64,000 bases of DNA, taken from Chlorokybus atmophyticus. Lineage: Eukaryota; Plantae; Mesostigma and Chlorokybus algae. The stretch covers positions 622,731 to 686,730 of the forward strand of contig RHPI01001616.1 of assembly GCA_009103225.1 (NCBI GenBank). Direction: 5' to 3'. The translations under genes and the position numbers were made by a program. The stretch's first letter is position 1. Each line of letters begins with the position of its first letter. The notes under the pieces were generated by a model. That model saw nothing but the letters and a program-made list of their open reading frames with translations. It was not told the origin of the DNA and did no database searches. Positions 5,994-35,241 of this stretch are shown piece after piece.

Positions 5994-6853
5994 CCCCCCC
6001 CCCCCCCCCCCCCCGAAAGCGGGTTTTAAACAACTAATTCATTGCAACATGTTACCCAAGTTGCACAAAAACAAAATTGTTACAGTACATGTACCGACCG
6101 GTCAAGTGTTAGACAATCGGTAACAAGCATTGCGATTGGCAATATAAAATGCTGGATTCAATGTGCACATTGTGTATATTGATATAATCGCTATGGTTTT
6201 ACTTGTTTTACGATATGTATCGCAGAGTTTTGCGCCTTTAATGAACTCGGTCTAGGATTCATCAAGTACATTTTGCCTTCAAGGCAAATGTTACACGGTG
6301 ACTGACTAAGGACTGAGGGACTGACTGGTGCCTGAGCCTGCCTGAGCTTGCCTGTCGCTGCTCAAAATGTTACATTTGGACTGTTGGGTTTGCCGTTGGC
6401 TTGAGTGGACTGACGCAGACGGCCGCGGGCCAAAAGTGGTTGTCAGTGGCACTAACCGGCCGAGAGTTGTCAACCAGTTACCCTTTGGTCGAAGTGCACC
6501 GACGGCCGTTAGCCGGTAGTTACGAACAGCTGACAGCAATAGCCGGCAGTTTCTTTGCCATTACACTGCTGTTAATATGTGACCCTAGTCGTTTGACAAA
6601 AGTTGGCAACTCTTGCCGTAAGCCAACACTAACATGCCATTATGGCATGATGCAGCTTGTACAAACCTTGGACTGATTGTTTGGTCTTGCACCTAAAAGC
6701 CCACAATATATACAATGTACCGGCAGTGGTGTGAGTATGTCCACTTGCAACTGAGCAGCCGACTTGCACATGAAACTACCCTATAACATTGAGTCTAGCT
6801 GTCGCACTCATGCGCAGCTTGTCAACCCGTGGTGCCTGCCTTATAACTCCTCC

Positions 6854-7300
6854 TCAAACCCCCTCCTCCTGTTCCTCCTCCAACAAGTCTTCTGCTTCAA
6901 CATCGGAGTCATCTTCATCCGCTGCCTCGCTCGCTGACAGTACAGCGGCTACTTCGTCCTTCAGCTTGAATGTCAGCGCCTCGCCGTGCACGCGCATGCG
7001 CTTGATGGTCGCTTTGAGAGTGACCACCTGCATTTGGTAATGCTGTAAGAGTGGCGTGCTGCCAGGACTAGCCCATCAGCATACACATGCTTACCTCGTC
7101 TTTCGCTTTGTTGCACTCTGCCAGGCAGACAGTCAGCCAGCCGCGCTGCTCTCGGTTCACTCTGACCAACATGGCAATCTGCAAGCATACTGCTTAATTA
7201 CCGCTGGAAACATTAAACTAGGTCATGGATTACCCGTTCGTGGTACTCCGCAGCTTCTCTTTTGCGGTTTGTGAGCTCCCGCAAGTAGAAATAGGTTGTG
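6854..7300 (-). CDS. 3' exons of an unknown coiled-coil protein with acidic tail
   Basis: Exons ..-7234, 7178-7095 and 7027-6854 splice in phase 0 (GTAATC/GTAAGC donors, CAG acceptors) to LRELTNRKREAAEYHER-IAMLVRVNREQRGWLTVCLAECNKAKDE-VVTLKATIKRMRVHGEALTFKLKDEVAAVLSASEAADEDDSDVEAEDLLEEEQEEGV*. 5' end unresolved. Confidence 0.5.
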
Positions 7301-8154
7301 CATTTGCGAGATTGGTCATGCTGATCATGTGCATGACACTGGAGGTTGTGCATGAGGGTGTGCATGTGGTATTGACAGTGTATGTCAAGTGCAAGATACT
7401 AGAGGCTGTGCATGTGCAAGATAAAAGAACCCTAGCATGTGGCACTGACAGTGCATCGTAACCCACCTTGGTTATGCCAGTCTTGTTTGGTCCCTTCAAT
7501 CATGTCGCCGTGGTCGCAGCTGCTGGTGGGTCGGATGTTCTTAGAGGCAGTATTGTGGTGTGCCTTTGCCCACTCGGAGGGGGAGCCCTGTAAGATGTCA
7601 CCCGAGTCACTGTTGTCATTGGCTGTGCCCTTGGTAGGCATGGTGGGGTTTGACACCAAGGACACCCCTCCGACACCCTGCCCGCCCTGTGCAAACATGG
7701 AATTCATCCCGGACCTCGACCACAATGCCCACTACGCCCCTGGCAGCGCCGCCAACGATCCACCAAACGCCACATACCCTCGGCATCACGCCCCTGTAAG
7801 GGCATAGCTTGGCGGAGCTATCAATGGTGTTTTCATGCGCAGGCACAGCACTTGTCAACAGTACGAACTGCCATTGCCACTGTACAAAGATACCATTTTA
7901 ATAATATCTTTTGGCAAAGGCATCTTCGTACCATTGAAACGGTTCAGTCAGGATACATATGCAGAGACTCACCCTGAACGTGCAATGGCTCGATCGTACT
8001 ATAATAATGGTACGACGGAGCCAGTGAATGGCGGCCAAGTTTCCCGCCTCTGGCATGCAAGGGTAGCGGCGGCGGCGGCGGCGGCGGGTGTGCGTGTTGC
8101 TGGATAAGATGCAGATTACATTGGCGACACCTGTGTCGACGTTGGTAGTAAGAT

Positions 8155-11100
8155 ATGGGAGTCCTTTGTCCGTATTGCCACATGCGCTTCGCCACACGCA
8201 GCGCGGTCAACATGCACATTATTAGCAGCAGGGTGTGCAAGCAAATCAAGCTGTATGTCGCCCAGCGTCCATTACAGTACGATGCGGGTCATGTTGAACC
8301 GGGGAGTTCGATCCAGGATGCGCACATGCTTGATGTTGAAGGATTCCTCTAGGAGAAGCACGCACAGCAGCAATAGGAGGAAGAGGAAGTGAACGAGGGC
8401 TTTCAATGTGTGCGTGTACCTGAGAAACCTGTGGCACGCCAACATGGAAATGGAGGCGTCCCTTCGCACGCGTCGGAATCCAAGTGGTATGGCTTGGAGC
8501 ATGCTCTTGCAGTGGCATTCGTGCAGTGCAACAACGGCCAAGGCCTGTCGGCCTCCGACATTGGGCGGATCATCAAGTGCATCCGAAATGCACACTTCCT
8601 GACGGAAGAGCTCCAGTAGGAGATCGGTGTGCATGTGGCCAGCTACCTCCGGACCACAATTGCTTTCTCTCAGTCTGAGGTGTGTTCACGGTGTGCGGTG
8701 CATGTGCTTCAACCATCAGAGCCATGTCACATATGCACATGCGAGTGTGCTGCCGTATCAGAATTACGTGACGGCTGACTTGCACAAGCCTAGAGACCCT
8801 GAGGATCAGGACATCAGCGTCACATATATGCCGGCCAAGGTCTGTGAAATGCAGTATCTAATGCAGTATCGATGCAGTATTTATCTATCTATTCTAAGGC
8901 CATCATGCCTGTTAATGCTCTTGGTCGGAGCAGGTATGGCTCGCATGGTTGTATGGCAATCCACATGCCGCCAATGGCTTCAGTCTCCAGTACAGTGGTG
9001 ACGAGCACAGCTTTGGCCATCCTTCCACGGGCGATTGGTGGAAAAATGTGGAGGTGGATTTGAGGAGAGAGGTGGGGGAAGCGTCCTACTTGGCGCCTGC
9101 CATTCTGTACAGTGACAAGACCACGCTGGGCAGCGCGGACAAGCGCTCTGGCTACCCTCTGATGGCATTGCTTGCCAACTACAGTTGGGACATGTATGCT
9201 AGCCACATGGGGGTTGTTATGATAGCGCTTCTGCCGGTGGTTCACGCAGTGGCCGGGCATCCCACCTGGGCGCAGGGCAAGAAATGGTTCTCCATTCGGA
9301 AATGTGAGATTTTTCATGACGCTTTGAATGTAGTGTTAGGGGATGTGAAGCGGGCGAGTTGGGAAGGTCTGCAGCTTATTGACCCAAATGGCATCGAGCG
9401 TCGTGTGTTTCCCGCGCTTGCCAACTACATCAGCGACTTGCAGGTAGTGGGCATGCATCGTTGTAACCGGATGCAGCCTGCCAGCAAACAGTGCATGGAG
9501 GATGTTGTCAATAGAGCATCTGAGTCTGTCGAGTTGTAGGAGACTGCCACACTCGCACGCACTGTGTCGGGCAACCAAATAGAACATCCTTGCGATGTTT
9601 GTCTCGTCACCAAATCGAATCTGTTGGAGATGGATAAGGACCGAGAATTGAGAACCGAGGCCTTCTACACATTAGCAATACATTAGCTGCGGGCGGACCT
9701 GCATAGCGGTGTTAGGAATGCACGCCAGACAGCCAAGGCTTTCAAAGAGCAGCACTTCATGCATGTCGAGGAGGTAATGGTCAAATTATCGGCATTTGTG
9801 AGGATGAATGGCTTTCCGTGAAACCAGGCAATGTGGTTTGGCAACAGAATGCATTGTGGGGTTGGCGACAGCCGCAGGTGCCGGGAGCTGACTGCTACTC
9901 TCGTCTTGCCCCTGACGCAATGCATGTGCTGGGAGGCATCATTGACCACCTGCTTGCTGCTGTGTACGACGCTATGAAGGAGCGAATGCGTCCATCCACG
10001 AGACAGATTCTGCAGGCTAGGCACGTTTTCGGTGTTGCTTTTGTGTTGAACACAAAAGCCAATGACACGCGCTCACAAGCAGATGTGCACAGGCTGAATG
10101 CATGCAATGCGACCCTACGGGTTTCACACTTCAAGGCACTCGCAAGCACAGTAGATTTCTTCCTGTCCGACCACTCCTTTCAGGTGGTGGCAAAAGTGGC
10201 GGTGCTGCAGCTGCTGCCGGTCCTTACAGACGGTTTGCTGCTAGACAGTGAGGGCAACGATTTCTCCACCATTGCTGCCGCATCGCTTGCCCAGTGGAAC
10301 AAGAAGTTGCTCAAGGCGCATGAACACACAAGAGAGACCCTGACCAAAGCCGACAACGAGCTGGCTGCCTTCAAAGCTGCAGTGTTGCATCCGCTACTGT
10401 CGTCATATTCTGCACAGGAGTCAGGTTGGAAGATCGAGAAGATGCATGCAGCTCACTCATTTTGGGCCGGCAATTGTCAGCTGTGAACATCCAGATTGGT
10501 TCAGCGCCAACCGCATGGAGCAGGCGCACGCCCAAAATATCAAACGGTGGGCGCGTAGTGGCAACAACCGAGACTACCAGGCATGTATCTTGAAGGCATG
10601 GAGCTGTGCGGAATATGTGATAGAGGAGGTGGCATGGTCGTGGATCCCGAGATGCGCTCGGTCATGGCGCAGGCGCGGCAGCAGTGCTGTAATGTAATGG
10701 AGAAGACAGACAAGTTGCTACGGATGGATGTGCTGACAAGGAGGGAGTCCAGCCCGTACTGGAGCGGATCTGCGCGTAGCCGCCAAGTCGCCCTGAAGAC
10801 ATTTGCCGACAAGCTGCCTGCCACCCTGGAGAGCTGGTTGAGGAGGGAACAACTGAAGCTGGCCGACGAGTGGCGTGCTGTTCGCGTGGTGAACGGAGGC
10901 GCAGCGGTGTACATGACATCAGGAGTCAGCATGGCGCGCGCAGCTGGGATGTTCCATGGGCAGCCTTGGTTCTCTACACTTGAGTTGGAAGGTGATGAGG
11001 ACGCTGTGAACGTGACATGGTGGGCTCAGGCACTCATTTTTCTGCGCGTGGTGGTGTGGGATGGTAGCGGCGAGCGCGTGTGGAAGGAGGTCGTGTTTGT

Positions 11101-11305
11101 CCGTTGGTACACAAAGCTGGATGTGACGAGCGACACAAAGTGCATCGCTCTAGAATGGGAAAAGCGTCGAGGGGGTCCACATCTCGATGTCGTGACTCTG
11201 GAGCAAGTAAAAGGCATTGTCCAGCTGCTCCCCATGTTTGACAAGGACAGCGCCCGTGTACAAGAGGGCAAGTATTGGGTGAACGTTCACTGCACTTCCA
11301 CGTGA
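8155..11305 (+). pseudogene. Plavaka-family (CACTA-like) transposase: N-terminal C2HC zinc finger, Plavaka catalytic region, C-terminal BAH-like region; spliced, with premature stops and one frameshift
   Basis: Motifs in order: CPYC-x12-H-x6-C; HPSTGDWW; PAILYSDKT; GYPLMALLAN; ALLP; FHDALNVVL; DPNGIERRVFPALANYISDLQ|E; CDVCLVTKSNL; LAPDAMHVLGGIIDHL; WKIEKMH(+1)QLTHF..FSANRMEQAH..IKRWARSGNNR; RAAGMFHGQPWF..WAQALIF..VFVRWY..QLLPMF..YWVN. TAG stops at ~8350, ~8374, ~8617, ~9683. Confidence 0.85.
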
Positions 11306-11508
11306 CACATGTACTTGTCTCACTACTCTGAGTTTGGAGCATATCAGTCAGTTAGGCATTGCTAATCGTATGCCAAGACTTTTGCATGTGGACGTGTACA
11401 ATACCGGGCAGCTGTCACTGCACAACTGTCACCACAATCGAATGTACCATGCAACATTTAACAATCAGTCCGCCGTGTGGCATTAAGCATCAATACAGTG
11501 CACCACAC

Positions 11509-12462
11509 TCAAGCCTCATAATTCCATGACACAGGAGGGTAGTCACAGCGCATATCCATTGTTTCAAGCATGAGACGCCCTATGCACTCCGCCATTGCGG
11601 CAGGAACTGCATTCGCTATGGTAACGGCCGAGGTCATTGATGGCACTCCCAGCGCTGTATGCCATGCAGCAAAGCCGCCCCTGGTGCTTGGAAGGCCATA
11701 GATCGTGTACATTTGCTGTGGCGTGTTTGATGTCACAATTGTCTTCTTCGCGCTAGCGGACAGGTGCGGCAATAGCAGTCCAACTGCCTTGCCCGCGTGC
11801 GAGCAGCGTGCTGGTGGGGTAGCTACCACTGGCTGTGTCTCAAACGGACGGTGTCGGAAAGTTGATAGGCCAAACATCGTGCCACAAAGGGACATATTGG
11901 GTCTGAATGAGGAAGCTGCTCCTGGCACATTCTCAATCACAAACTTGACCAGGCTTGCAAGCAGCAGACGTCGGACGAGCGGTACCATATCCTGGTGTCT
12001 CCAGGATGTGCCATGTGCCGCCCGTTGAGGTGCCGGGATAGCACCTGAATAGGCCTGGCATGGTGGGCTGGCCCAGATGAGCTCGTACTCGCTCAGCTCT
12101 CCTGCACTCAGGGTGCATACATCGCGGTGTATGAAGGGCAGCGGGTACTCAAAGGAGGGACTTATGTCCATCCCGGTCACGTCAAAGCCTGCGTGGTATA
12201 GACCGACACTGGCACCGCCACCGCCGCAGAATAGATCGAGTGCCCTTGGTCTGCGTGTGCGTCCAAGCTTGTTGTCAAACGGCGTGTATGTGGTCAAGGC
12301 TGGCCGTAGTGCTGGCCAGGGAATAACAATGATGCCGTCCGGGCTTACTTTGCTATTGACGTTCTCCCCTCCGGCGCGCAGAACGAGGTGCCCCGTCAAT
12401 TGATGTGTACGCGAATACGTTGTGCCCTTTGAAGTTGATGGTTTGTGGTCGATCACCGTCAT
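11509..12462 (-). CDS. C5 DNA cytosine methyltransferase, short phage/actinobacterial type
   Basis: Uninterrupted 317-codon ORF with motif I LDLFCGGGGASVGL, GFDVTGMDI, motif IV WASPPCQAYS (catalytic Cys), motif VI FVIENVPGA, LCGTMFGL..RHRPFET (motif VIII) and motif X IANAVPAAMAECIG. Confidence 0.9.
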   Translation of the reverse strand: MTVIDHKPSTSKGTTYSRTHQLTGHLVLRAGGENVNSKVSPDGIIVIPWPALRPALTTYTPFDNKLGRTRRPRALDLFCGGGGASVGLYHAGFDVTGMDISPSFEYPLPFIHRDVCTLSAGELSEYELIWASPPCQAYSGAIPAPQRAAHGTSWRHQDMVPLVRRLLLASLVKFVIENVPGAASSFRPNMSLCGTMFGLSTFRHRPFETQPVVATPPARCSHAGKAVGLLLPHLSASAKKTIVTSNTPQQMYTIYGLPSTRGGFAAWHTALGVPSMTSAVTIANAVPAAMAECIGRLMLETMDMRCDYPPVSWNYEA

Positions 12463-12643
12463 CGAATACTATAGGGTGCTGCCCTGCAAAGACATATTCC
12501 ATTGCACCATGCATATATGATGCGTCCTCAATCTCGCACGCCACGAAGCGATGCAGACTTGACGCTTGCTTGAATGATTCCACAACGCCCGCATACCAAT
12601 CCCAATTCAGCGGCCAATGCACCATAACACTCACACCGATCAG
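12353..12643 (-). pseudogene. Tudor/Agenet-like domain immediately upstream of, and overlapping, the DNMT ORF in a different frame
   Basis: E*LIGVSVMVHWPLNWDWYAGVVESFKQASSLHRFV resembles the plant Tudor-like pattern L(V/I)GxxIxVxWPxDxxWYxGxVxxF (MSH6/PDS5-type). Flanked by TAG codons at 12644-12646 and 12353-12355. Confidence 0.6.
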
Positions 12644-12856: not shown

Positions 12857-13234
12857 TTACCTCCACAGCATCCACCACCTGTTCACTAACCACATGTCCC
12901 GGTGTTGTCCATGTGAAGAAGCGCATGGGTTCCCTCGCCACTCGAAGCATGAGCGCGAGCACGATTCGCACACGCACTGCACGCAATGGAAAAACTCGGG
13001 CTCCTTGCTCAGCACTTGGCCGAGGCGGCAGCCAAACACGTCGACATTGTGTGTGGTGTGATGCCAGCAAGCAGCACTAAAACCGTGGCACACTGTCTGC
13101 ACTCGCTGGCATTTGGTCAAGTGTGCTCGCATTTGCTGCCTACGGCCATTGGCACATACGTACGCATTGCATTGTGGGCACACCAAGCATGGTCTCATAG
13201 GTGAGGGGGAATCAAATGCTGCCGCCGACATCAT
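12857..13234 (-). CDS. Cys/His-rich zinc-finger ORF, possibly the N-terminal exon of the Tudor-DNMT gene
   Basis: CPQC-x15-H-x3-C followed by FHCVQCVCESCSRSC. Same strand as, and ~200 bp upstream of, the Tudor-like segment. Confidence 0.45.
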   Translation of the reverse strand: MMSAAAFDSPSPMRPCLVCPQCNAYVCANGRRQQMRAHLTKCQRVQTVCHGFSAACWHHTTHNVDVFGCRLGQVLSKEPEFFHCVQCVCESCSRSCFEWRGNPCASSHGQHRDMWLVNRWWMLWR

Positions 13235-15769
13235 GCAAAATAGGAGTCGGCACGGCTGCCCACAAACTGAGCAAGATTTTAGGGTATGGGCATCAATTTA
13301 GGGTTGCCAGCTTACAAACCCTAAATGGGTCAAACTTCAAGTGAAGCACGACTGTACCATGGACGCTATTGCAAACCCATGCATGGTACTACATCTATAT
13401 GAATGGTACTCCATCCGTTAATGGTACTACAGTACAAGGATACTCGCATACTACCTCGATCGTAGAGTAATACTGTGCTGTCATTCCATGGAACCCAGAG
13501 CGCTGTCCGAAGTTGTTACTGTCAACCACGCTCTGTACCAGCGAGGTATGCAAGCCATGCACTGACTCATGCGTCGGGCGGTCATCATGCACATGTACAG
13601 CCAATGCTTCTGACAACAGCAGATCTCGGGTGCATCATGCACCATGCTGCAACTATACATGTACCTACATGGTTCACAGGAAGCCAACACAAAACTACAA
13701 TACATGCACAATTGTCATTAAGGCGGGGGCCAAATCACCGCCGACACGTTGGCGTCTTGCATCAAGCGTGGCGACCAAAACGGGTGAGGTTGCTTGTTGA
13801 AGGGACACGCTTGTAGATTCTTTGATTTATTTGCCACGGTCTTCTGATGTGCTATGATGCAGACATGGCACATCGCTTTCTTGCAACAGGGCGTCTCCCC
13901 ATCCGCTGAGGGGGGTGGCTCTTCAATGCGACAAATCAGTACACATGGTGCACGCGGGTGTGCAAGCTGCCTCAGCCACCAAACTCTGTTTACGCGTTGC
14001 AGGCTAAGGGAATTCCCATTTGAATGGCGCAGCATAACGCTCCACTACCTGCTCGATCACCTGTTGCCCATCTGCCGCCATACACCACCTGCTGGTCTTG
14101 ATGGTCTCGTCCAGCATGCGTTCATCAAGGCCCTCGACATGGCTGTCGTCACTCGTGTACTCCCCCGCATCGTCATTTTCTTCGAGCTTCCACAGAATCA
14201 GCTCGACGTGCCGTATGACATACAGCCACTGCTAGCCAAAGCATGCCAAGTACAGCTCGAATGGTTTTACTTGCCACCCAGTATGTTTGCTCGTGTGGCA
14301 CACATCTCGACCCGCATCGGTCGACATCGACAGGTACATCTGCTGCAGCAGGTTGAAGTTCTGCTCCGCAGATAGCTCTTGCACATTGCCGGGGTGCTGC
14401 GGCAGCAACACCACCATCATATCGAGGACGGCGAGGGGCAACAACGTATTACGGATGGCCATATCGTGTATGGGTTCCAACCACCGCCATTCCCCAGAGG
14501 TCTGTTTAGACCGCATTTTCCGCGTTTGCTCCCACTTATTGCAAACTTTCGTCACCCACCTCGAGGCATGCCGCATGCGGTGATGCAGCGCGTCTTGGGC
14601 GTACTGTAGGGTGATCAACTCCTTTGCACTACGAGTCAACCCCCCAAAGCGTCTGCGCGTCGGTGCTTTGAGCTTAGGCAGCTCGTGCCGCACCGGCTGT
14701 CTCTCTGGACGATGCTGAGCAGCCACTTGACGCTGTAAACCCGCCTGTGCCTACTCAGGACACGCAATCAGCCCCAGTGAGGCTTCAAGGCGCTGTGCTT
14801 CTTCTAATGTTGTAACGATGCCTCACCTTTCCTTTTTTGGTCCTGTCAGCGTCCTTTATTCCAATAACCTTCTCTTTTTTTTGGCCAACCTGCACATCCT
14901 GGCAGGCGCTCTCCGTGGCACTGTCACTTAGAGGAGGTAAGGCGTTATCTTCTTGCTCCACAGCCTTGCGCTTGTTGGTTGCCTCCCGTTCCTCCACGAC
15001 CTCATGTTGCTTCATGAGGTCGAGCATGAAGCCTTTGTCTTTCAGCGCAGCTTTCAGGACACCTCGATCAATCTCTTTACCAACAAGACAGGCTGGGATC
15101 AATGTGGCAAGCTTAGAGGGAGAGGGCGAGCTACAGCTGCTTCTTGATGGAGATGCCTCCGGATGGTCAGAGTGCGGTGGCAAGTGAGTATCCGCGGCAG
15201 GAAGGGAGGGTGCTGAATTGGGATTGCGAGCATGTGGCTGTGGTTGAGGGGAGGCAGGATGTGCAGAACACTCGGCTACTTCTTGCCTAGCACACGAAGG
15301 CGAGGCCTGAGGCGTTGGCGCAGCACTCTGAGTCACAGCCGGTGGTAGCGGGGAATTGGCAACGCCATTCCGCCATTCTCCGATCAGGTGTTACCTCCGG
15401 TGGCACTTCATGTTGAAGGTATTACATGGGTGATGCTTGTATCCGGTCAGCTTGCCCTTCATACAGGAGTCGAGGGTCGAAGGTACCAGGAAGAAGCGCG
15501 TGGACTCCAGACTTAGCAAGACGGTCGAGTCATGACGGACTCCGGACCAGGCTGCTTGGTAGAGCCTTGGGAGAAATCGCGTAGCTTTGTGGATACGTAA
15601 GCTTAGCAGGCGTGGCTTAGCTTGTTGGAAAGCTCTAGTTGTGAGCTAGACAGCGTAGCTTACAGAACAACAATCGGCTGAGTATAGCGCACGCGGTGCT
15701 TGCCAATGTAGACGTGTGTAGAGACTGGCGGGGTATAAAGCCCAGACTTGTTGCAATGAAGATGAGAGG

Positions 15770-16597
15770 TCACGATGTAGCATGTGTGCGGATGCTATGG
15801 CAGTAGCAGTCATGCTCTTGTGTTGATGTTGTTGGCGTGTCACTTGCACGTGTGTATGTCAACACTTCATGCATAGGCCACGACCAATGTTCGGTGCTTG
15901 CAGGCTTGAGGAGCCAAAAGTGTGATTCTGGCTCATTAGGAGCAGTGTTGCCCACCACCAGGACTGAGTTGAGGGCTTCGTTATTTCCAACCCAAACTGC
16001 GCTGCCGGGCTGTGGCACCCACTCCCCATGCTCGCGCTGAACGGTCACGAAGCCAATCAACAAGCCCAGCTTGTTGGCAAACATGGTCATTTGCAGGTGC
16101 TCGACGTAGACATCTTTTCTCTGCACGATCTGTCGCACCTTGGCCATGGCTATGTCAATGTTGCAATTGACATCTGCCAACATGGTCGCAGGCAGTTTGT
16201 TGTAATACTGCACCATCTCTCCCGCGGCACCAGTGGCTCTGCAGAAGTCTAAGATTCTGCTCGCCACGCCTGCATCGACAGCCTTGGCGGTGATTTTGCG
16301 GAGAGTGTCCCCCCTACCGACGTCGTCAATGGTGTTTAGCATGGCCCAAAATGTGCTCGAGCTGGGGCACTTGTGATCATTCAGGACACTTTGCGCTATG
16401 GATGGCCTGGCGCGAAATACACAATGGTAGAAGCAATTACCATCCGTCGGCGCATTGAAGTGGTCCCATGAGGCGAGCTGGCCACCTAACAAGACTGATG
16501 GCCGTATGCGGGTTGCACCTGCCAGCTCCTCTGATGACTCGCTGGCAGGTGGTGACCCCTGCTGCATGCGCATGCAGCACGCAAATGGTGTGTCCAA
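15770..16597 (-). CDS. OTU-like cysteine protease (deubiquitinase-like) domain exon
   Basis: PTDGNCFYHCV (OTU D-x-x-C box), YVEHLQMTMFANKLGLLIGFV (helical box) and ESHFWLL (catalytic His box) in correct order. Confidence 0.75.
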   Translation of the reverse strand: MDTPFACCMRMQQGSPPASESSEELAGATRIRPSVLLGGQLASWDHFNAPTDGNCFYHCVFRARPSIAQSVLNDHKCPSSSTFWAMLNTIDDVGRGDTLRKITAKAVDAGVASRILDFCRATGAAGEMVQYYNKLPATMLADVNCNIDIAMAKVRQIVQRKDVYVEHLQMTMFANKLGLLIGFVTVQREHGEWVPQPGSAVWVGNNEALNSVLVVGNTAPNEPESHFWLLKPASTEHWSWPMHEVLTYTRASDTPTTSTQEHDCYCHSIRTHATS

Positions 16598-17596
16598 CTG
16601 TGGACGGCAAGAGTCACAGTGACTGATAAAATACCAGTTTGGGGCAGACTGCCGGCTTCAACTTGCAGTGAGTGGGGTAAGGTAGGTGCAGAAGCCACAT
16701 CGGTTGTTGCATTGTGCTGTGGTCTCGCCGGTGGCGGCAAGAGGGATTGTTGCCCCGCAATCACCGGTGCAGCTCGTGGAGGTAATGGCAGTGCATGAAA
16801 GACTGGTGCCGCAGAAGGTGGTTGCGCTCTGGCTGCGAGGGGAGCAGGAGCGGCGGGTATGACCACTTGTGCATGCAATAAGGGGGGCTATATACAGGAC
16901 CCAAGATAAGATGGCTCAACAATGTTGCAAAGGCCGAATATAAGCTTATGCAGTGTCTGACACATTGTTATCAAGGCACGAGCATAAAAGACAGCGACTT
17001 ACCTCAATGGCCCGTGGGCTGCATGGAGCAGCGGAAGCCATGGGCGCCGACAAGGTGGTATTGAGTGCACTCTCCCCGCCACCCTCGATCGCAGACTCGT
17101 CATGGAGCTCGTGAGCCATGGGCACATCATGCGCCACTGCCCCAATGGACATGTCGGGATTCAACAGGCTAGCATGCATGTTAAACTGATGCCGCATTGC
17201 CGCCACGCCCATCAGCAAGTGGGATTGAAGGACCAGTTGATGGGATTGAATCCAGGATTGCATAGGAGCTCCTACAGGCCCTAGTGCACTGTGGTGCTGT
17301 CAACCAATCACATGCGAGTTAGCTGCATGCTTGCGACACTGCAATTGCAATAGTCAACTGCGTTACACCGTCATCAGTTGGTTGCTTCAAACAGTCACCT
17401 GCGGCATTGCTGGTTGATGCACGAATGACTGCATTAACTGCGTCATTGCTGGTTGATGCACTATTGGTTGAATGCCGGACGAATGGCCACGCGCTCCTGT
17501 GCTCAAATCCAGCCTACTTCGTTCGGCACGCGCGCGCGACTTCGCACGCTCCCGCACATCTTAGCATGCAAAGGTAGGCATGCATTGGAAGTGCAT

Positions 17597-18201
17597 TGTT
17601 ACGACAAGGGTCCGGCCATCTAAGCCATAGAAGACCATGGTGGGATTTATGACTATTCCCATTCTTATGTATTACGCCCAGCCCCCCTGGCTGCCGTAAC
17701 ACACCTCCCCCATTAGAATGTAGCACGTCCTCGGCTACTTCTTATAGGGTTCTTTTTTCTTAGCCCTCCGCCCGCGGGCGACCGAGCCATCCCGAACGGA
17801 TTCGGTGCGGTCATTTCTGCGACCGGCGGGTCAACACCGCGCGGTCGTTCTCGTTCTCGAGAACGTTGTCAGCCGTTCTCTCGAATGTTCTGTTCGAGCG
17901 ACCGTTCTAGATCGCGTTCTAAACCGTCCCTTTCGTTCCTTCCGACCTGCGACTTGCCCAAGGCCGCGGGTCCCACCGCGACTTTCTCAAGATCGCGGTG
18001 CACTTTCCTTGGAGCTTTTGCCAACCGAAAAATCGCCGCTCTATCCCCCTTGGAAGTCGAGCCCACGACCTTTAAGTTGTCAACTCCGATACCAAATGTT
18101 ACGACAAGGGTCCGGCCATCTAAGCCATAAAAGACCATAGTGGGATTTATGACTATTCCCATTCTTATGTATTACGCCCAGCCCCCCTGGCTGCCGTAAC
18201 A
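17597..18201 (-). mobile_element. TRIM (miniature non-autonomous LTR retroelement), 605 bp
   Basis: 105-bp LTRs at 17597-17701 and 18097-18201 (TGTTACG..CGTAACA, 2 mismatches); 5-bp TSD TGCAT; on the minus strand PBS TGGTATCGGAG and PPT ATGGGGGAGG; no coding capacity. Confidence 0.92.
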
Positions 18202-18882
18202 TGCATGCAGTAAACATGCATAGCGAGATTGGCAACAACATACCGCCTCCCAGCTCTGTCTATCTGCTGTGGCTTCCGCAATGTCGGCTTGATTATAGGG
18301 TGGGTATGGGTGAATAGTGGAGGCCTGCAGCCACGCTACACGTATCACATGGACTGCGCTAAAAAACAAATTGCTCGTGCAAGGAAATGCATGTGACTGT
18401 TGAGCGTACCTCTGCATTCCTTTGTGCTTGTTCCCACAGCCGCAATTGGTCCCGCATGGTTCGGACAAGGGGCTCCAAGGACTGCAGCTCCCGATTCACT
18501 CCTTGTTGCAGACAGCGAGCCACCAAGCAGCTCTTGGTGTAAAGATGGTCCTTAATGGCTTGCCTGCTGTTTTGTCCAATGTTGGTGATGCATGTTGGAC
18601 AGCCCCATTGCTGACGCCTGCCATGATTCATGACGTGGCGCTCGGTAGTAGCTGGCTTCGCTGCTTGAACTCTTATGACCACAACTTCTCGCAAGATGAG
18701 CCACGCCGCCGCGGCTCCGACTCCTGGTCCTCCGCCTCCTAGTCGAACCCAGGCCCACTATGCCTGATATTCGACTCGTCATCAACCTGGTGCCCCTGCG
18801 TGCCATCATCCGGCCATAAATGAAGCGTGTTTGGGTGAGTGCACGCTAACTCCCATTTGGGCTGATCAAGCAATGCCTCTGT

Positions 18883-19042
18883 ATGCCTTTGTCGTACCAT
18901 GAATCGTACGACAGAGCCATTGTACGGCAATGGCTGGGGTTGGACGAGAGATGCCTTTGTCGTACCATAAATGTTACGACACAACCATTGTTACCAATGG
19001 TTGTACAAAGCATAGATGGCACGAATGCATAAGTCGTACCAT
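18883..19042. repeat. Two-and-a-bit tandem units (~68-74 bp), each with two hairpins
   Basis: ATGCCTTTGTCGTACCAT at 18883 and 18951, partial copy at 19025. Stems TGTCGTAC/GTACGACA and AGCCATTG/CAATGGCT in unit 1; CAACCATTG/CAATGGTTG in unit 2. Confidence 0.85.
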
Positions 19043-19209
19043 CAACCACAGAAGCAAGGACGCACTACAAGTGCGACTCTACTGCGGGACACTAGACGTT
19101 CAAAACCGCCTCATTTTCGTTTTCGCGCCTCGTACATTCGGGCGGGCCAACCGGCGGCGGAAGCGCCACTATCAGCTAAACAGGCGGCACCCGACTATCA
19201 GTTAAAGAG

Positions 19210-21032
19210 ATGCCTCGTGGTCCATCCGTAGGTGCACCTCGTCGTGGAGGCCGACGCTAGTTGTCCACATTGCCCCCAGTGTTCAACCAGGCAACCGTCG
19301 CCAACCAATCGCAGCAAGACCCCGTGCTAACGCCCAGCACATCACAACAACTCCACTTGACACCGCAGTTGCAAGGGCAAGCTAGACTGCATGCATTCTT
19401 AATGCACTGTGCACGTTGCTTCTTGCTCAACTTCTGACTTGGATGCTTTCTTCTTTCATGACTGGCACAGTGACTCACTGCATGCGTTCTGGATACACTG
19501 TGCACGTTGTTCTTCTTTTGCAACTGTGAGAGTTGCATCTTTCATGGCTGGCAGCATGACTCATCCAGTTGTGCTTGCAGAGGGTCGATTGGAACCCCCA
19601 ACCCAAACGCATTTGACCGTGACGTGGCAACTTCGGCCGTCAGCAACCCTTCCACAAGCAAGTGGAAGATTGGTAACGAGGTAAGCACTGTGTGACACTG
19701 TGACATCGTGTATATGTGTGTAACGGATTGTTCTTCTGTGGACAGCATTTGCGAGATGCCGTCGTTGAAATCATAAACGGCCACTAGGTAGAGAGCCACG
19801 TTTATCCCAAGGAGGACACTATTTGTAACGTCATGTGTCAGGTGCTGTGAATGCTTCATGACCGCATTGAACCGTGACACTGACCAACCTGCCCGTGACA
19901 GGTAGTTGGCTTCGACCATGACGACGAGGCCGATGCGGCCAAGTTCTATGAGGTGTACTGGGCTCCCAAGGAGTGCCCCTTCCACTGGAGTGTCGCCTTG
20001 AAGAAAGCTACGCAGGTCTGGTCTGAGAACGCCACCAAGATCAAGCATGTCCTTCAGAAGGAGTACAAGTAGACGCTGTTTAACAGCAACAAGCGCAAGT
20101 GAGTTGGGTCCCTCACTACCATGTTTGCTATGCAACACTGCCTTCTTACTCAGCCTCCATACACACGTACGCATCTCGCCTATTGTAACCGATTCAATCA
20201 GGCACATCGACGCCCTAATGGACCCCAAGACCCAAAAAGCCCAGATGCGCAACGCTCTAAAGTAAGTCACAGGCACTATTCTAGCCTGGTGCAGGCTCAA
20301 CTTGAACTATCTATATCGTGACTAATGCCTTGTTGGTATGACTGTTGCAGACAAGTCATGGCGGAGATCTGAGGTGACTGACACTGCAGACCTGGAGCGG
20401 AGGAGATACATCCATGAATGGGGCAATCCCATAATCTGGCAAATGATCATGCAATGCTGATCTTACGCCGTCACTATACCTAATCGCCGGCAGCTGACAG
20501 TCAACCACCTCGCATACCTGTTGCTTACGGTGAGCACTCTGAACTCCATCATTAGCAATTCAGGAATGCTGTAGCCCCAAACTACAGGTTTGTAGACGTG
20601 TTGCAGTGAATAGTGGCTTTCGATGCCACTAAGACATGCCTGTAAACTACGCAGGTGGAGCGCATCCTAAAGGGCAAGGATGGAGACCCTCTTAGCTGCC
20701 AGCATCGACACACATGAAGAGTACCTCAGCGAAATCAGCACCATAATCATGTTAATGAAGCGGGAGATGAGGCAACGGTACGCAACCCTCCAGCCATTCA
20801 CCCTTGTGAAACGCCGCACTGCGTCTGTGTCGAATACCTGAAAGATCTCAATTGGCGCCGGCCGCAAGAGACAGCAGCTCGTGACCCGCTTGCTGAGGCA
20901 GAATCGGCATTTAATTGGCTGGCACAACCGTTTGAGGAGGAAGAGCAAGCTCCGGCGTCTCCTCCACAGGCCCCAGCGCGTGGTGCTTTGCTCTATGATG
21001 ACGAGCAAAGCGATGACGAAGAGGAGCTGTAG
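19210..21032 (+). pseudogene. Unknown spliced gene with acidic C-terminus, many nonsense codons
   Basis: Starts MPRGPSVGAPRRGGRR*LSTLPP; contains VGFDHDDEADAAKFYEVYWAPKECPFHWSVALKKATQVWSENATKIKHVLQKEYK*; ends LLYDDEQSDDEEEL*. Confidence 0.45.
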
Positions 21033-21428: not shown

Positions 21429-21799
21429 AATTAGGCTTAGTCGCCTGCGCTGGACTTGTGTGTAACCTGCAGGTGCCTGTCACATAGGCTGAGTCACCTA
21501 AGTAAGACTGATGCGTAATTTGCAAGTGCCTGCTAATTAGGTGTAGTCACCTGTTAAGGCCTGATGTGTAACTTACAGGTGCCCGTTGATTAGTTGTAGT
21601 CACTTAGTAAGGCCTGATGTGTAACTAACAGGTGCTTGTGAATTATATAAAGTCACCTGTTAAGGCCTGATGTGTAACTAACAGGTGCCTGTTAATTATA
21701 TAAAGTCACATGTTCAGGCCTGATAGGTAACCGACAGGCGCCTGTTAATTAGGCATAGTCAAATGTTAAAGACCAAATTGTAACAATAAGGGCCTGATA
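21429..21799. repeat. 53-bp tandem array, 7 units (subterminal-repeat-like)
   Basis: Units start at 21429, 21482, 21535, 21588, 21641, 21694 and 21747. Consensus approx. AATTAGGnnTAGTCACCTGTTAAGGCCTGATGTGTAACTAACAGGTGCCTGTT. Confidence 0.9.
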
Positions 21800-21820
21800 G
21801 TAACGGAAGTTACTATCAGG
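21793..21820. other. Perfect 12-bp hairpin with GGAA loop at the end of the 53-bp array
   Basis: CCTGATAGTAAC-GGAA-GTTACTATCAGG. Confidence 0.9.
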
Positions 21821-23458
21821 TCCCTGTATCGAGATTACAGGTGGCCTGAGCCACGACAGTCTATATTAGTGTCCTCAGGTGCACGGCCGTTGCCAATATT
21901 TAGTCGGCCGGCAGGGAAAACATATTGCGATGTTCGAAGTTCTTTTATGTAAATTACAGAGTTTAAACTTCAAATTTGCATGGCGCTGTTAACCTTGGAA
22001 GACAGCATGTGGCTAATTGCTGCAAAGATGCTATATGCATGCTTGCCTCTCCTATGCTCGCCCACAGCGAGGTCATACTATCCTGCAGCTAGAAATCCAA
22101 GTATCGCATAAAAACAAAACATTGTAATACAGCGTTAAGTATAGCTTGATTTACTATATCACTTACTGTTGGACATAAAGCACGCTTGGCATATGTTAAT
22201 GGCAGCTAGCTATTGCATCAATTCCTGAGAGGCATCATTCAAATCCACTACGACATGGAGTATGCATGTTCATACAATATGCAAGTGCAGCCCTCACATT
22301 AAGCAAAACTTGCCACCTGCTCTGTTAACACAACTCCAAACCTGTTTCTCTCGCTCACACGCAAATAAATGAGACGCTTGCATGCGGACATCGTCCGCAC
22401 AAATCTTGCAGAAAAAGTCGCCATTAAACTTGTCGTAGTCGAAGCATGTAGCACCAGCTGCGCGTTTGCCCTTCACAATGAGGGTACAAGTTGTCTACCC
22501 ATGCGCGTCATCACCTCGCGTCTATTGTTGTATAACCGCAATATGGCAATATGTCGACATTGAAGCCGTCTTGGAAGTGTGAGATACGACACGACTATTG
22601 GGATCCATCATAAGTAGTGCGTGGTTCACAACCCCGCCCTCGAAGCATGTGTTGTAGGGCCGCTGCAAGTGCTAATCGCATAGTGAGCTCCACATGACAC
22701 AAGGAGCGGTGACAGGATGTTGATATACAAACGGGGTGTGAGCGGTAGTGTTACCGGCTACTATAGTGATTGAGGTGTTGTGGAACATAATATTTTGCCC
22801 GGTGGTTCAATGTGTGCCGATTGCGGTGATCAATTGTGTATGAATACCCGAGATACATTTTGCATACAAGCAACATGTGTTTGCATGTGACAATGAATGT
22901 GGCACACATGATGCACGAGGAATCCTACTCCACAACTACTGTACAAGAGCGTTCAACCACACAATACCCTACCATACCGCTTCCAATAATTTGTGCATGG
23001 CTGTCAACACGATTCTTAGTCTGTGTTTGCTCTCACCATCATTCAGTCCAATCTGTGCATGTATTCATGCCACGGCACTGATACAGCATATCCAGACTGC
23101 TCTCAGCAGCAGTAGCGTGCAGTAATGGCTCCTCCGCACAGCACACATTGCAACATGCGCCTCTAGGCGCCCATTGCCTGGGCCAGATCAATATGCTGTG
23201 TAACACTACTGCTCCAACCCAGCGTGCTTCCAATACCCCATGCAGCAGCAGCAGCAATTAGCCACCTGTCCTCGCTGTGTATTCTTTGGGAAGGCCAATT
23301 GTGCAACAATGCTGGTGCCTTGGCATGGCACCCACAACGCCTAAGCGCACACCACAAGCTGGCTTGATACGAGGTGGCTAGGCACCGAGCATCACAGCAG
23401 GTGAATAAGCTTCTCCAGCCCAAAACCGAAACCCAAACCCACAACCCCAATCCCATTG

Positions 23459-24792: not shown

Positions 24793-27787
<2,995 letters not shown>

Positions 27788-33089: not shown

Positions 33090-35241
<2,152 letters not shown>

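What the first reader, a model, noticed from the sequence alone, without database searches (positions are those of the whole stretch)
6300..21900. Giant Plavaka-type DNA transposon carrying a chromatin-modifying cargo set (DNMT + Tudor + OTU + zinc fingers)
Seen: five or six spliced non-housekeeping genes packed between host genes. Order: acidic coiled-coil gene (-), Plavaka transposase (+), C5-MTase with Tudor-like and zinc-finger segments (-), zinc-finger/OTU gene (-), unknown acidic-tailed gene (+), then a 53-bp array and hairpin. All share the same style of nonsense decay. Established: Plavaka is a CACTA-like transposase family known mainly from fungi, CACTA elements often carry Ulp1-type proteases, and cytosine MTases have been reported as cargo of retrotransposons in dinoflagellates and charophytes. 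Inference: this is one ~15-kb cut-and-paste element encoding a methyl-DNA writer, a methyl-lysine/arginine reader and a deubiquitinase, which could self-mark or manipulate host silencing. I recall large Plavaka-type repeats reported in the ichthyosporean Amoebidium, so novelty must be checked against that. A DNMT+Tudor+OTU DNA transposon in a streptophyte alga is not something I know as described.
Basis: partly seen in the sequence, partly recalled or inferred. Interest (0 to 1): 0.92.

Follow-up and report, generated by a model that had tools for sequence, protein, structure and literature searches.

The report
Dead Plavaka transposon beside intact chromatin genes
A roughly 15-kb stretch of a plant-like alga's genome holds a broken "Plavaka" jumping-gene enzyme packed among intact orphan genes, one fusing a plant-type histone-reading Tudor domain to a virus-type DNA cytosine methylase; whether they travelled together as one transposon could not be tested here.

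Summary
Firm calls:
- Plavaka transposase (Pfam E=1.8e-20).
- C5 DNA methyltransferase: motifs I, IV, VI, VIII and X are intact, and a pLDDT 80 model matches only DNMT structures.
- A Tudor domain closest to Arabidopsis PDS5C, an H3K4me1 reader (E=0.003), joined in frame to the methylase.
- The 53-bp array and the 12-bp hairpin.

OTU rests on motifs only: Pfam, homologue search and fold all failed. The "zinc fingers" are unclassified Cys-rich stretches.

"Shared nonsense decay" is wrong. Only the transposase is broken (one in-frame TAG, at least one frameshift). Gene A (163 aa), the OTU-like gene (464 aa) and the Tudor-methylase part splice into uninterrupted ORFs.

The methylase belongs to a phage and giant-virus clade, not to the plant DNMT families.

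The one-element claim stays untested. I found no TIRs, no second copy and no composition boundary, and the source genome could not be searched. A related ~14-kb Plavaka locus and published red-algal giant Plavakas with methylase cargo and repeat arrays make it plausible.

Verdict: partly supported. If real, it is a new variant of a known kind.

The parts
6078..6680 (.). Candidate left end and subterminal region. It holds TGTTACA at 6078, 6289 and 6368, and GACTGA five times between 6300 and 6671. An assembly gap (5814-5993) lies just to the left.
   Evidence: Three of the window's 5 TGTTACA copies and 5 of its 17 GACTGA copies fall here. TGTTACA at 6078 and TGTAACA ending at 21785 are each flanked by AT, which fits the PlavakaA termini TGT..ACA with a 2-bp TSD (PMC12730594). 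A 9-mer match of this kind is at chance level, and k-mer sharing with the right end is not the best in the window.
6854..7641 (-). Gene A: a small protein with an acidic tail and a coiled-coil look. Four exons (7641-7450, 7275-7234, 7178-7095, 7027-6854), 163 aa, intact.
   Evidence: The spliced ORF runs ATG to TGA with no internal stop, and all three introns are GT-AG. No Pfam match.
8377..11305 (+). Plavaka-type DDE transposase pseudogene. Homology supports 8937-11305. Introns lie at 9444-9539 and 9774-9847. There is an in-frame TAG at 9684-9686, a +1 frameshift near 10450 and a return to frame by about 10700. A further TAG at 8617-8619 sits in an N-terminal exon that rests on inference only.
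   Evidence: Pfam PF18759 E=1.8e-20. tblastn alignments to P0122, P0149 and P0159 lie in two frames. DNA reading. Splicing test leaves one internal stop. Stop codons checked.
11509..12643 (-). 3' part of gene C: a Tudor domain (12643-12559 plus 12483-12411) joined in frame to the C5 DNA methyltransferase exon (12352-11509). Motif positions: motif I DLFCGGGG 12214-12237, motif IV PPCQAY 12049-12066, motif VI ENV 11920-11934, RHR 11839-11859.
   Evidence: Tudor: PDB 7de9 E=0.0033, and the two aligned stretches skip exactly the inferred 75-nt intron. The three exons give a 333-aa stop-free ORF. DNMT. The tree places it with the long, virus-contig clade.
12860..14044 (-). Cys-rich ORF pieces upstream of the Tudor domain (12860-13297 and 13721-14044), possibly metal-binding.
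   Evidence: The sequence shows CxxC-type spacings. No Pfam or PDB match. Their link to gene C is inferred from strand and order only.
14235..15390 (-). Two long open pieces of unknown function (14235-14750 and 14788-15390). They are either the 5' part of gene C or a separate gene.
   Evidence: ORFs of 172 and 201 aa. No Pfam or PDB match.
15770..17446 (-). Gene D: Q/P/A-rich N-terminus plus a C-terminal OTU-like cysteine-protease domain. Four exons (17446-17399, 17296-17003, 16887-16663, 16597-15770), 464 aa, intact. Cys loop DGNCFYH at 16424-16444; ESHFW at 15914-15928.
   Evidence: The spliced ORF has no internal stop and its introns are GT-AG. Motif coordinates. The best two PDB hits are nairovirus OTU Cys loops at E about 0.5. 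Collinear weak similarity to an OTU-type ORF in L009. Pfam negative.
17597..18201 (.). Small nested repeat: two 105-bp direct repeats, 98% identical, flanking about 395 bp. It lies upstream of or inside the 5' region of gene D.
   Evidence: the repeat finder family D5. Sequence. Self tblastn hits.
18411..18640 (-). ATG-initiated exon with a CPTC...H...C motif that ends at a GT donor. It may be a 5' exon of gene D or a separate small gene.
   Evidence: Sequence reading. No Pfam or PDB match. I could not join it in frame to gene D.
19899..21032 (+). One or two small (+) genes. An exon ends at a GTAAGT donor at 20263. The last ORF, 20680-21032, has an acidic DDEQSDDEEEL tail and needs a frame change near 20825.
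   Evidence: ORF listing. DNA. No Pfam match. The 254-aa (-) ORF at 19545-20306 is probably an antisense artefact.
21452..21785 (+). Right-hand array of 53-bp units, each starting GGCCTGATGTGTAAC and holding a palindromic core AACAGG-TG-CCTGTT. A candidate right end, TGTAACA, lies at 21779-21785.
   Evidence: TRF reports 4.9 copies at 81% match. Both unit motifs are confined to this array and exceed shuffle expectation. Five of the window's 21 TGTAAC copies fall here.
21793..21820 (.). Perfect 12-bp hairpin, CCTGATAGTAAC-GGAA-GTTACTATCAGG. It is a unit start followed by its own inverted copy.
   Evidence: DNA fold gives -11.6 kcal/mol, z=-5.9, with 0 of 200 shuffles as good.

Best explanation
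The block is most likely the immobilised remnant of one large Plavaka-type (CACTA/CMC-related) DNA transposon, spanning roughly 6.1-21.8 kb, in a streptophyte-like genome.

SHOWN
- The DDE transposase can no longer be made: it has a premature TAG and at least one frameshift.
- The neighbouring genes have complete open reading frames.
- One gene joins a PDS5C-type Tudor domain in frame to a catalytically complete C5 DNA methyltransferase. That methylase falls in a clade otherwise found on phage and giant-virus-like contigs.

INFERRED
- The accessory genes were carried as cargo.
- The Tudor domain tethers the methylase to H3K4me1-marked, transcribed chromatin. The enzyme would then write 5mC there rather than at random. 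This could give the element a gene-body-like methylation state, or alter host silencing.
- The OTU-like protein, if active, removes ubiquitin-type marks from chromatin or silencing factors.
- The 53-bp units with palindromic cores and the terminal hairpin are subterminal binding sites for a dimeric element-encoded protein, the transposase or one of the small acidic proteins.
- With the transposase dead, this copy could move only with transposase supplied by another copy. The intact cargo may now serve the host.
For: Transposase identity and lesions:
-.

Nothing in about 15 kb resembles a conserved housekeeping gene:
- Pfam finds only Plavaka and DNA_methylase.
- The OTU-like exon has no homologue at E<=0.01 among database proteins of comparable length.

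The DNMT is not a plant type:
- Its nearest relatives sit on virus-like contigs. L002 carries an mRNA-capping enzyme, a protein kinase and a RING protein. L014 and L015 are similar. L013 carries a phage replication module.
- The tree places it with those sequences at 98/96 support.

Tudor-DNMT fusion:
-.

Architecture precedents:
- Red-algal giant Plavakas of 17-19 kb carry a DNA N6-methylase plus SET gene, and tandem arrays of inverted repeats lie beside an accessory gene.
- L004, which holds the closest full-length transposase found (37% identity), is a ~14.4-kb unit. It has 13-nt perfect CATCATC... termini, subterminal tandem arrays in inverted orientation and three extra genes.

Weak end signals:
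- TGTTACA...TGTAACA with AT on both sides, plus clusters of the same motif.

Surroundings:
- Ordinary host genes lie elsewhere in the window: TIP49, a hybrid histidine kinase and HMG-CoA reductase.
Against: - No TIR or TSD is above chance, and the array motifs have no left-end counterpart.
- k-mer sharing between the two putative ends ranks only 7th of 246 at k=6 and 3rd at k=7.
- No second copy lies in the window. None could be sought in the source genome.
- The related Plavaka loci L004 and L016 carry no DNMT or OTU homologue.
- Base and dinucleotide composition matches the rest of the window.
- The transposase carries about four disabling lesions in about 2.6 kb (one TAG and one frameshift with homology support, the other two inferred). 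About 2.2 kb of accessory coding sequence carries none, where about 3 would be expected (P about 0.04 by my Poisson estimate). This points to selection on the accessory genes as host genes.
- In L004 the right end lies only about 1 kb past the transposase stop. By that analogy the DNMT would lie outside the element. A 12-nt inverted match, 6670-6681 against 11460-11471, would bound such a small unit.
Confidence: 0.45

Rival explanations
1. A small Plavaka relic (gene A plus transposase, about 6.1-11.5 kb) landed beside lineage-specific host genes. The Tudor-DNMT gene would be a host or long-domesticated "orphan" or ChloroDNMT-like methyltransferase acquired by lateral transfer. The OTU-like gene would be an unrelated fast-evolving host gene. 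Neither was ever cargo.
For: - Only the transposase is broken. Genes A and D and the Tudor-DNMT part are intact with host-like short GT-AG introns.
- Composition matches the host.
- The Tudor domain is plant-type.
- Laterally acquired orphan DNMTs, and a chlorophyte/charophyte "ChloroDNMT" lineage that often carries a PWWP reader, are described (PMC12344493).
- In L004 the element ends about 1 kb after the transposase.
- A 12-nt inverted match joins 6670 and 11471, and two TCAGTC motifs lie in 11344-11471.
- The related Plavaka loci lack DNMT and OTU.
Against: - The 12-mer has no TSD and does not extend into a TIR (sequence).
- Five orphan genes packed around a transposase, ending in a structured repeat array, match the published giant-Plavaka layout.
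- Published orphan DNMTs generally lack companion domains.
- Nothing here matches a conserved plant gene family.
- The word-based search saw no eukaryotic homologue of the DNMT, but it was limited to proteins of 175-558 aa.
Confidence: 0.33
2. The block is a decayed fragment of an integrated giant virus (an endogenous viral element) that a Plavaka transposon entered or accompanied, as in the "giant repeats" of Amoebidium.
For: - The DNMT's nearest relatives lie on virus-like contigs.
- The only OTU-type sequences sharing the exact Cys loop were on giant-virus-like metagenome contigs. L010 sits next to a ribonucleotide reductase.
- Plavaka transposases flank giant repeats in Amoebidium.
Against: - Pfam found no viral hallmark among the ORFs scanned.
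- The genes carry several spliceosomal introns, and one is fused to a plant-type Tudor domain.
- Composition is host-like.
- The OTU loci were retrieved through an 8-residue pattern taken from the query, so that link is circular.
Confidence: 0.08
3. An unrelated neighbourhood: a transposase pseudogene, one laterally acquired methylase gene and several spurious or fast-evolving ORFs that share no history or function.
For: - Most ORFs have no detectable family.
- A codon-usage score could not separate coding from non-coding pieces.
- No repeat structure ties the ends together.
Against: - Complete multi-exon ORFs with canonical splice sites of 163, 464 and 333+ aa are unlikely by chance.
- The repeat array and the hairpin are far from random.
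Confidence: 0.05

Closest known systems
Giant Plavaka DNA transposons of red algae (Bostrychia moritziana, Chondrus crispus; bioRxiv 10.1101/2025.02.11.637652)
   Same: - A Plavaka DDE transposase sits with several accessory genes in a 15-19-kb unit.
- One accessory protein combines a DNA methylase with a chromatin-related domain.
- Tandem arrays of inverted-repeat units lie beside an accessory gene.
- Most copies are degenerate.
   Different: - There the methylase is an N6-adenine type (PF01555) fused to SET, and another gene is ParB-like plus a 2OG oxygenase.
- Here the methylase is a C5-cytosine type fused to a Tudor domain, alongside an OTU-like gene.
- No PAG-type domain turned up in my Pfam scans.
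- The host is streptophyte-like, not a red alga.
- Copy number and ends are unknown here.
Fungal Plavaka, KDZ and other DNA transposons carrying TET/JBP dioxygenases (Iyer et al. 2014; PMC12730594)
   Same: - The same transposase family carries an enzyme that acts on cytosine methylation.
- Termini are short: TGT..ACA or CATCA..TGATG, with 2-3-bp TSDs.
   Different: - The fungal cargo erases or oxidises 5mC. The enzyme here would write it.
- The fungal elements are defined from many copies with clear ends.
DNMT-bearing retrotransposons (SymbioLINE and DIRS in Symbiodinium, KnitGypsy-Dnmt3 in Klebsormidium; PMC5890265)
   Same: A mobile element encodes its own C5 DNA methyltransferase, and one example is in a streptophyte alga.
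   Different: - Those are retrotransposons with the DNMT inside or beside pol.
- The Klebsormidium and DIRS enzymes are of eukaryotic Dnmt3 type and intron-less.
- Here the setting is a DNA transposon, the catalytic domain is of virus or phage type, and the gene has introns and a Tudor reader.
Orphan (laterally acquired) DNMTs and ChloroDNMTs of eukaryotes (PMC12344493)
   Same: - The methylase falls outside DNMT1/3/5 and has viral or bacterial affinities inside a eukaryotic genome.
- ChloroDNMTs of green algae and charophytes often carry a Royal-family reader (PWWP).
   Different: - Orphan DNMTs are reported as generally lacking companion domains. This one has a Tudor domain plus Cys-rich regions.
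- Membership of ChloroDNMT could not be tested, because no sequences were available to me.
PDS5C/RDM15 and MSH6 Tudor domains of plants (PDB 7DE9)
   Same: This is the best structural relative of the Tudor exon. The block V-x-W-P...Y-x-G-V-V-E-S-[FY]...[IV]-[FY]-D-D-G-D is shared.
   Different: In plants this domain recruits cohesin-associated and mismatch-repair proteins to H3K4me1. Here it is fused to a DNA methylase. Binding specificity was not tested.
OTU cysteine proteases carried by Helentrons/Helitrons (PMC4067079) and by nairoviruses and giant viruses
   Same: The Cys loop D-G-N-C-F-Y-H and a later His-aromatic motif are present, in a mobile-element or virus context.
   Different: No profile, homologue or fold support was obtained here. 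The residue two positions after the His is Trp, not Asp, Asn or Glu.

Membership tests
Plavaka transposase (Pfam PF18759; CMC/CACTA-related) | Profile match above the curated threshold over the DDE core | tested here: met
   73.9 bits against a cutoff of 26.3, E=1.8e-20. Collinear tblastn matches to 840-875-aa Plavaka proteins, including the C-terminal domain.
Plavaka transposon (as an element) | Short defined termini (TGT..ACA, or CATCA..TGATG) with a 2-3-bp target-site duplication | tested here: inconclusive
   TGTTACA at 6078 and TGTAACA ending at 21785, both flanked by AT, fit the PlavakaA rule. The match is at chance level. No CATCA-type pair was found. An assembly gap at 5814-5993 may hide the left end.
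Plavaka transposon (as an element) | Several copies sharing the same internal gene order and the same ends | not testable with these tools
   The source genome cannot be searched. There is no paralogue in the window. The only close transposase relative is a 552-bp metagenome contig.
Plavaka transposon (as an element) | An intact transposase reading frame, needed for autonomy | tested here: not met
   In-frame TAG at 9684-9686 with no GT donor that could splice it out. Frame change near 10450 shown by overlapping alignments in two frames.
C5 cytosine DNA methyltransferase (PF00145) | Catalytic motifs I (FxGxG), IV (PCQ), VI (ENV), VIII (RxR) and X, and the methyltransferase fold | tested here: met
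   Pfam 23.3 bits against a cutoff of 22. All columns invariant across 50 homologues are kept. AF2 pLDDT 80.5 and pTM 0.82. The top 50 Foldseek hits are DNMT3A/B, DNMT1, M.HaeIII and one DNA cytosine C5-carboxymethyltransferase, at probability 1.00.
Canonical plant or eukaryotic DNMT families (MET1/DNMT1, CMT, DRM/DNMT3) | Closest sequence relatives and tree position within those families | tested here: not met
   No PDB chain, DNMT1 and DNMT3 included, reaches E<=0.01 by sequence. The nearest relatives are 200-390-aa enzymes on phage and giant-virus-like contigs. The tree groups it with these at 98/96. Caveat: the search saw only proteins of 175-558 aa.
ChloroDNMT (green-algal and charophyte DNMT lineage with PWWP; PMC12344493) | Clustering with that lineage in a DNMT phylogeny | not testable with these tools
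The family is known to me only from the paper's text.
Tudor domain, PDS5C/MSH6 (H3K4me1-reader) type | Significant sequence match to a solved member across the beta-strands | tested here: met
   7de9_A E=0.0033. Two collinear stretches become contiguous once the 75-nt intron is removed. Identity of the entry is given. Pfam itself gave no hit on the unspliced exon.
Tudor domain, PDS5C/MSH6 (H3K4me1-reader) type | Aromatic cage and H3K4me1 binding | not tested
   Aromatic positions look largely kept in the alignment (W/H, W, Y, F). I did not map them onto the published cage, and binding needs an experiment.
OTU cysteine protease (PF02338) | Profile match above the threshold | tested here: not met
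   No Pfam family even at E<=10. No homologue at E<=0.01.
OTU cysteine protease (PF02338) | Catalytic Cys loop (D-G-x-C-[FL]-[FY]-[HR]) followed about 130-180 residues later by a His-aromatic motif in the same frame | tested here: met
   DGNCFYH at residue 72 and SHF at residue 245 of the exon. The top two PDB hits are nairovirus OTU Cys loops at E about 0.5. There is collinear weak similarity to an OTU-type ORF. That ORF was retrieved through this very motif, so it is not independent evidence.
OTU cysteine protease (PF02338) | OTU fold | tested here: inconclusive
   The single-sequence AF2 model has pLDDT 36, and its Foldseek hits are meaningless.
Red-algal Plavaka accessory-gene (PAG1-3) cassette | N6-adenine methylase (PF01555) plus SET (PF00856) gene, and a ParB-like plus 2OG-oxygenase gene | tested here: not met
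   None of these domains appeared in about 25 ORF pieces scanned. Only the feature [quoted passage not shown] is shared.
Endogenous giant-virus element | Viral hallmark genes (capsid, PolB, packaging ATPase and the like) in intron-poor genes | tested here: not met
   No such Pfam hit. The genes have several GT-AG introns.

The most novel reading that the evidence does not exclude
The Tudor-DNMT gene is a working reader-writer. A PDS5C-type H3K4me1 reader steers a methylase of giant-virus or phage ancestry to transcribed chromatin. It was brought in and spread by a Plavaka transposon. It now either lets the element disguise itself with gene-body-like methylation or has been adopted by the alga as a gene-body methylase. 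That would be a transposon-delivered route by which a streptophyte gained a new DNA-methylation pathway.
Probability: 0.15. Interest if true: 0.85.

Novelty: new variant of a known kind. Interest (0 to 1): 0.58.

Why it matters
Mobile elements that carry their own writers or erasers of DNA methylation show how parasites and hosts fight over silencing. So far, C5 methylases are described mainly in retrotransposons. Plavaka cargo so far comprises TET/JBP dioxygenases or N6-adenine methylases.

A C5 methylase of viral ancestry fused to a plant-type H3K4me1 reader would be a new combination, and it makes a testable prediction about where the enzyme acts. This holds whether it rode on a Plavaka element or merely lies next to one.

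Published surveys say laterally acquired "orphan" DNMTs usually lack companion domains, so this fusion is unusual either way. [quoted passage not shown]

The value is limited for now: this is a single, immobile copy, and the element status is unproven.

Tried and rejected
ENDS AND BOUNDARIES
- Long TIRs or direct repeats at the ends: none above shuffle controls.
- CATCA, TGT or CAC-anchored terminal pairs: best 19-21 of 30 matching, which is chance level.
- Counterparts of the array motifs at the left end: none.
- k-mer sharing between the ends: not top-ranked, and driven by AT-rich intergenic composition.
- CpG, TpG and GC profile as a boundary marker: flat.

GENE CALLS
- A codon-usage score to pick coding pieces: uninformative with so small a training set.
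- Stop-codon reassignment (TAG read as a sense codon) to explain the in-frame TAGs: rejected. Exons of 295 and 319 aa contain no TAG or TAA at all, and the frameshift is independent evidence of decay.

OTU
- Pfam at E<=10, a homologue search, a single-sequence AF2 model and Foldseek all failed.
- hhalign against four viral OTUs matched only the Cys loop. It is also circular, because those loci were fetched through that motif.
- I did not fold the OTU domain on an alignment of those viral OTUs, because the alignment would impose the fold.

OTHER COPIES
- Paralogues in the window: none.
- Co-occurrence of DNMT or OTU with related Plavaka transposases: absent in L004 and L016. P0149 is not on record.

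OTHER
- Rfam and tRNA scans of the window: nothing.

Full report
WHAT THE WINDOW IS

The window is eukaryotic nuclear DNA with short GT-AG introns of about 55-175 nt. Outside the block it carries ordinary genes: a TIP49/RuvB-like ATPase, a hybrid histidine kinase and an archaeal-type ATPase-domain gene. It also carries an HMG-CoA reductase whose best matches are land-plant enzymes at 68-73% identity. A Ty3/Gypsy chromovirus with 98%-identical LTRs lies at 51.6-57.4 kb. Rfam and tRNA scans found nothing.

THE TRANSPOSASE

The ORF piece 8916-9536 (+) matches Pfam Plavaka at E=1.8e-20. Full-length Plavaka proteins (P0122, P0149, P0159; 840-875 aa) align collinearly from 8940 to about 11245, including the C-terminal domain.

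Reading the DNA gives these features:
- A 96-nt GT-AG intron (9444-9539) removes one apparent stop.
- A second intron (9774-9847) brings the frame to the NALW motif, where the P0122 alignment resumes.
- The TAG at 9684-9686 lies in coding sequence, and no GT donor upstream could splice it out.
- Near 10450, alignments to P0149 and P0159 overlap in two frames (KIEKMH, then LTHFGPAIV). This is a true frameshift. The frame returns by about 10700.
- A splicing test leaves exactly one internal stop in 8937-10451.
- A further TAG at 8617-8619 lies in an N-terminal exon that I inferred without homology support.

The transposase is therefore a pseudogene.

It is also a rare lineage. A scan of 1.84 billion representative proteins gave one close hit, at 66% identity on a 552-bp metagenome contig. 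Everything else was at or below 37%.

THE METHYLASE GENE

The 319-aa exon 11512-12468 (-) passes Pfam DNA_methylase only marginally. It nevertheless has 2092 homologues and keeps every column that is invariant across 50 of them. These include motif I DLFCGGGG, motif IV PPCQ, motif VI ENV, the RHR of motif VIII and the C-terminal motif X. An AlphaFold model built on that alignment has pLDDT 80.5 and pTM 0.82. Its top 50 PDB fold matches are DNMT3A/B, DNMT1, M.HaeIII and one DNA cytosine C5-carboxymethyltransferase.

By sequence it is far from the canonical families. No PDB chain reaches E<=0.01. Its relatives are 200-390-aa enzymes found in three settings:
- a contig with an mRNA-capping enzyme, a protein kinase and a RING protein (L002);
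- contigs sharing a neighbouring Methyltransf_21 gene (L014 and L015);
- a phage replication module (L013), plus IMG/VR contigs.

A maximum-likelihood tree puts the window's enzyme with P0001 and the long, virus-contig clade at 98/96 support, on a long branch. One caveat applies. The homologue search only saw proteins of 175-558 aa, so longer eukaryotic kin would have been missed. That includes the "ChloroDNMTs" of green algae and charophytes, which often carry a PWWP reader (PMC12344493).

THE TUDOR DOMAIN

The 96-aa piece just upstream (12356-12643) hits PDB 7de9_A at E=0.0033 in two collinear stretches that skip residues 35-54. Those residues are the 75-nt GT-AG intron I had inferred at 12558-12484.

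7DE9 is the Arabidopsis PDS5C Tudor domain bound to H3K4me1. The shared block is V-W/H-W-P...Y-x-G-V-V-E-S-[FY]...[IV]-[FY]-D-D-G-D.

A second short intron (12410-12353, 58 nt) joins the Tudor frame to the methylase frame. The three exons give a 333-aa ORF with no internal stop. This is a reader-writer fusion of a plant-type domain with a virus-type catalytic domain.

Upstream lie Cys-rich pieces (12860-13297 and 13721-14044) and two long open pieces (14235-15390). None has a Pfam or PDB match. Whether they belong to the same gene is unknown.

THE OTU-LIKE GENE

Four exons (17446-17399, 17296-17003, 16887-16663, 16597-15770) with GT-AG introns of 102, 115 and 65 nt give an uninterrupted 464-aa ORF. 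The last exon has PTDGNCFYHC and, 172 residues later, ESHFW.

The evidence for OTU is thin:
- The two best PDB hits are nairovirus OTU domains at the Cys loop, but only at E about 0.5.
- Pfam reports nothing even at E<=10.
- No homologue was found.
- The single-sequence model was unusable.
- A pattern scan of metagenomes fetched four OTU-type ORFs from giant-virus-like contigs. One aligns weakly but collinearly over 138 residues. These were retrieved through the motif itself, so they are not independent.

I rate OTU as probable, not shown.

THE OTHER PARTS

- Gene A (7641-6854, -) splices into an intact 163-aa protein with an acidic tail.
- One or two small (+) genes occupy 19.9-21.03 kb, the last with an acidic tail and a frame change near 20825.
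- A 605-bp insert bounded by 105-bp direct repeats sits at 17597-18201.
- The 53-bp array is real. Its two motifs are confined to it and exceed shuffles. Each unit has a palindromic core.
- The hairpin has a perfect 12-bp stem, z=-5.9. It consists of a unit start followed by its own inverted copy.

IS IT ONE ELEMENT?

This is the crux, and these tools could not settle it.

Evidence against, or simply missing:
- No TIR, TSD or flanking direct repeat beats chance.
- The array motifs have no left-end partner.
- Composition shows no boundary.
- No paralogue exists in the window.
- The source genome is out of reach.
- Two related Plavaka loci carry no DNMT or OTU homologue.

Evidence in favour:
- A weak candidate pair exists: TGTTACA at 6078 and TGTAACA ending at 21785, both flanked by AT. 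It fits the PlavakaA rule of TGT..ACA termini with a 2-bp TSD, and the motif is locally clustered at both sides. Matches of that size are expected by chance, and k-mer sharing does not single out the right end. An assembly gap at 5814-5993 may hide the true left end.
- The layout has precedent. Red-algal giant Plavakas carry a DNA methylase plus SET gene, and tandem inverted-repeat arrays lie beside an accessory gene.
- L004 holds the nearest full-length transposase found. There I found a ~14.4-kb unit with 13-nt perfect CATCATC termini, subterminal arrays in inverted orientation and three extra genes.

Evidence that cuts the other way:
- In L004 the right end lies about 1 kb past the transposase stop. 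By that analogy the DNMT would lie outside.
- A 12-nt inverted match (6670 against 11471) could bound a 4.8-kb unit.

DEAD TRANSPOSASE, LIVE NEIGHBOURS

The transposase has about four disabling lesions in about 2.6 kb (one TAG and one frameshift with homology support, the other two inferred). About 2.2 kb of accessory coding sequence has none, where about three would be expected (P about 0.04 by my Poisson estimate). That points to selection on the neighbours. They are either domesticated cargo or were never cargo.

VERDICT

The components are mostly confirmed. The unifying interpretation is plausible (0.45) but unproven, and a strong rival holds that host or laterally acquired genes lie beside a small relic (0.33).

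The kind is already known: giant Plavaka elements with chromatin cargo, and mobile elements encoding DNMTs. So this would be a new variant.

The most interesting solid result is the fusion of a PDS5C-type Tudor domain with a virus-clade C5 methylase. It is unusual for laterally acquired DNMTs, which are reported to lack companion domains.

Noticed in passing
window 51622-57433, plus 63228-63667: A Ty3/Gypsy chromovirus: RT, RNase H, integrase SH3 and chromodomain. Its 300-bp LTRs are 98% identical, but the pol frame is interrupted. A third LTR-like copy, 87-90% identical, lies 6.2 kb downstream and is either a solo LTR or the start of another copy.
   Followed up: partly
window 34331-34752: A pure (TC)211 microsatellite ending at a single N. 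It lies inside an open frame of an ATPase_2-domain gene (33355-35032, +), where it would read as (LS)n. This may be an assembly join or an intron.
   Followed up: no
window 26182-26251: A run of 70 C followed by a single N, immediately upstream of the TIP49/RuvB-like exon. A similar C-run borders the 180-N gap at 5814-5993. Homopolymer C/G tracts seem to break this assembly.
   Followed up: no
window 17597-18201: Two 105-bp direct repeats, 98% identical, enclose about 395 bp. This looks like a miniature terminal-repeat element inserted in the 5' region of the OTU-like gene.
   Followed up: partly
window 18883-18991: Two 41-nt copies, 68 nt apart, of a self-complementary unit (ATGCCTTTGTCGTACC...GGTACGACAAAGGCAT-like). 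A related "cttgtcgtaaca" ends the 105-bp repeats nearby. This may be a MITE-like remnant.
   Followed up: no
window 44910-44967 (and 43.7-44.7 kb): A tandem repeat of a palindromic 17-mer, ACCAAACGGTTTGGTCC, x3.4. The surrounding AT-rich 1 kb shares more rare 6-mers (GTTACA, ATGTTA, AATGTA) with the block's left end than the block's own right end does.
   Followed up: no
L004 223-14611 (GCA_965154635.1, contig CBCUJL010000004.1): An apparently complete ~14.4-kb Plavaka element. It has 13-nt perfect termini CATCATCTCAAAT, subterminal tandem arrays at both ends in inverted orientation, an 840-aa transposase and three unannotated extra genes. The 2-3 bases flanking the two ends do not match.
   Followed up: partly
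L001 2028-3050 (Logan SRR23617210): The closest relative of the window's methylase (P0001, 46% identity) carries a weak MBD (methyl-CpG-binding) Pfam hit in an insertion between the catalytic motifs. It sits on a 6.8-kb intron-less contig of otherwise unknown genes.
   Followed up: no
L002 and L014/L015: In the virus-like contigs, the related methylase gene lies next to or near a Methyltransf_21 (PF05050) gene each time, which suggests a conserved two-methyltransferase module.
   Followed up: no
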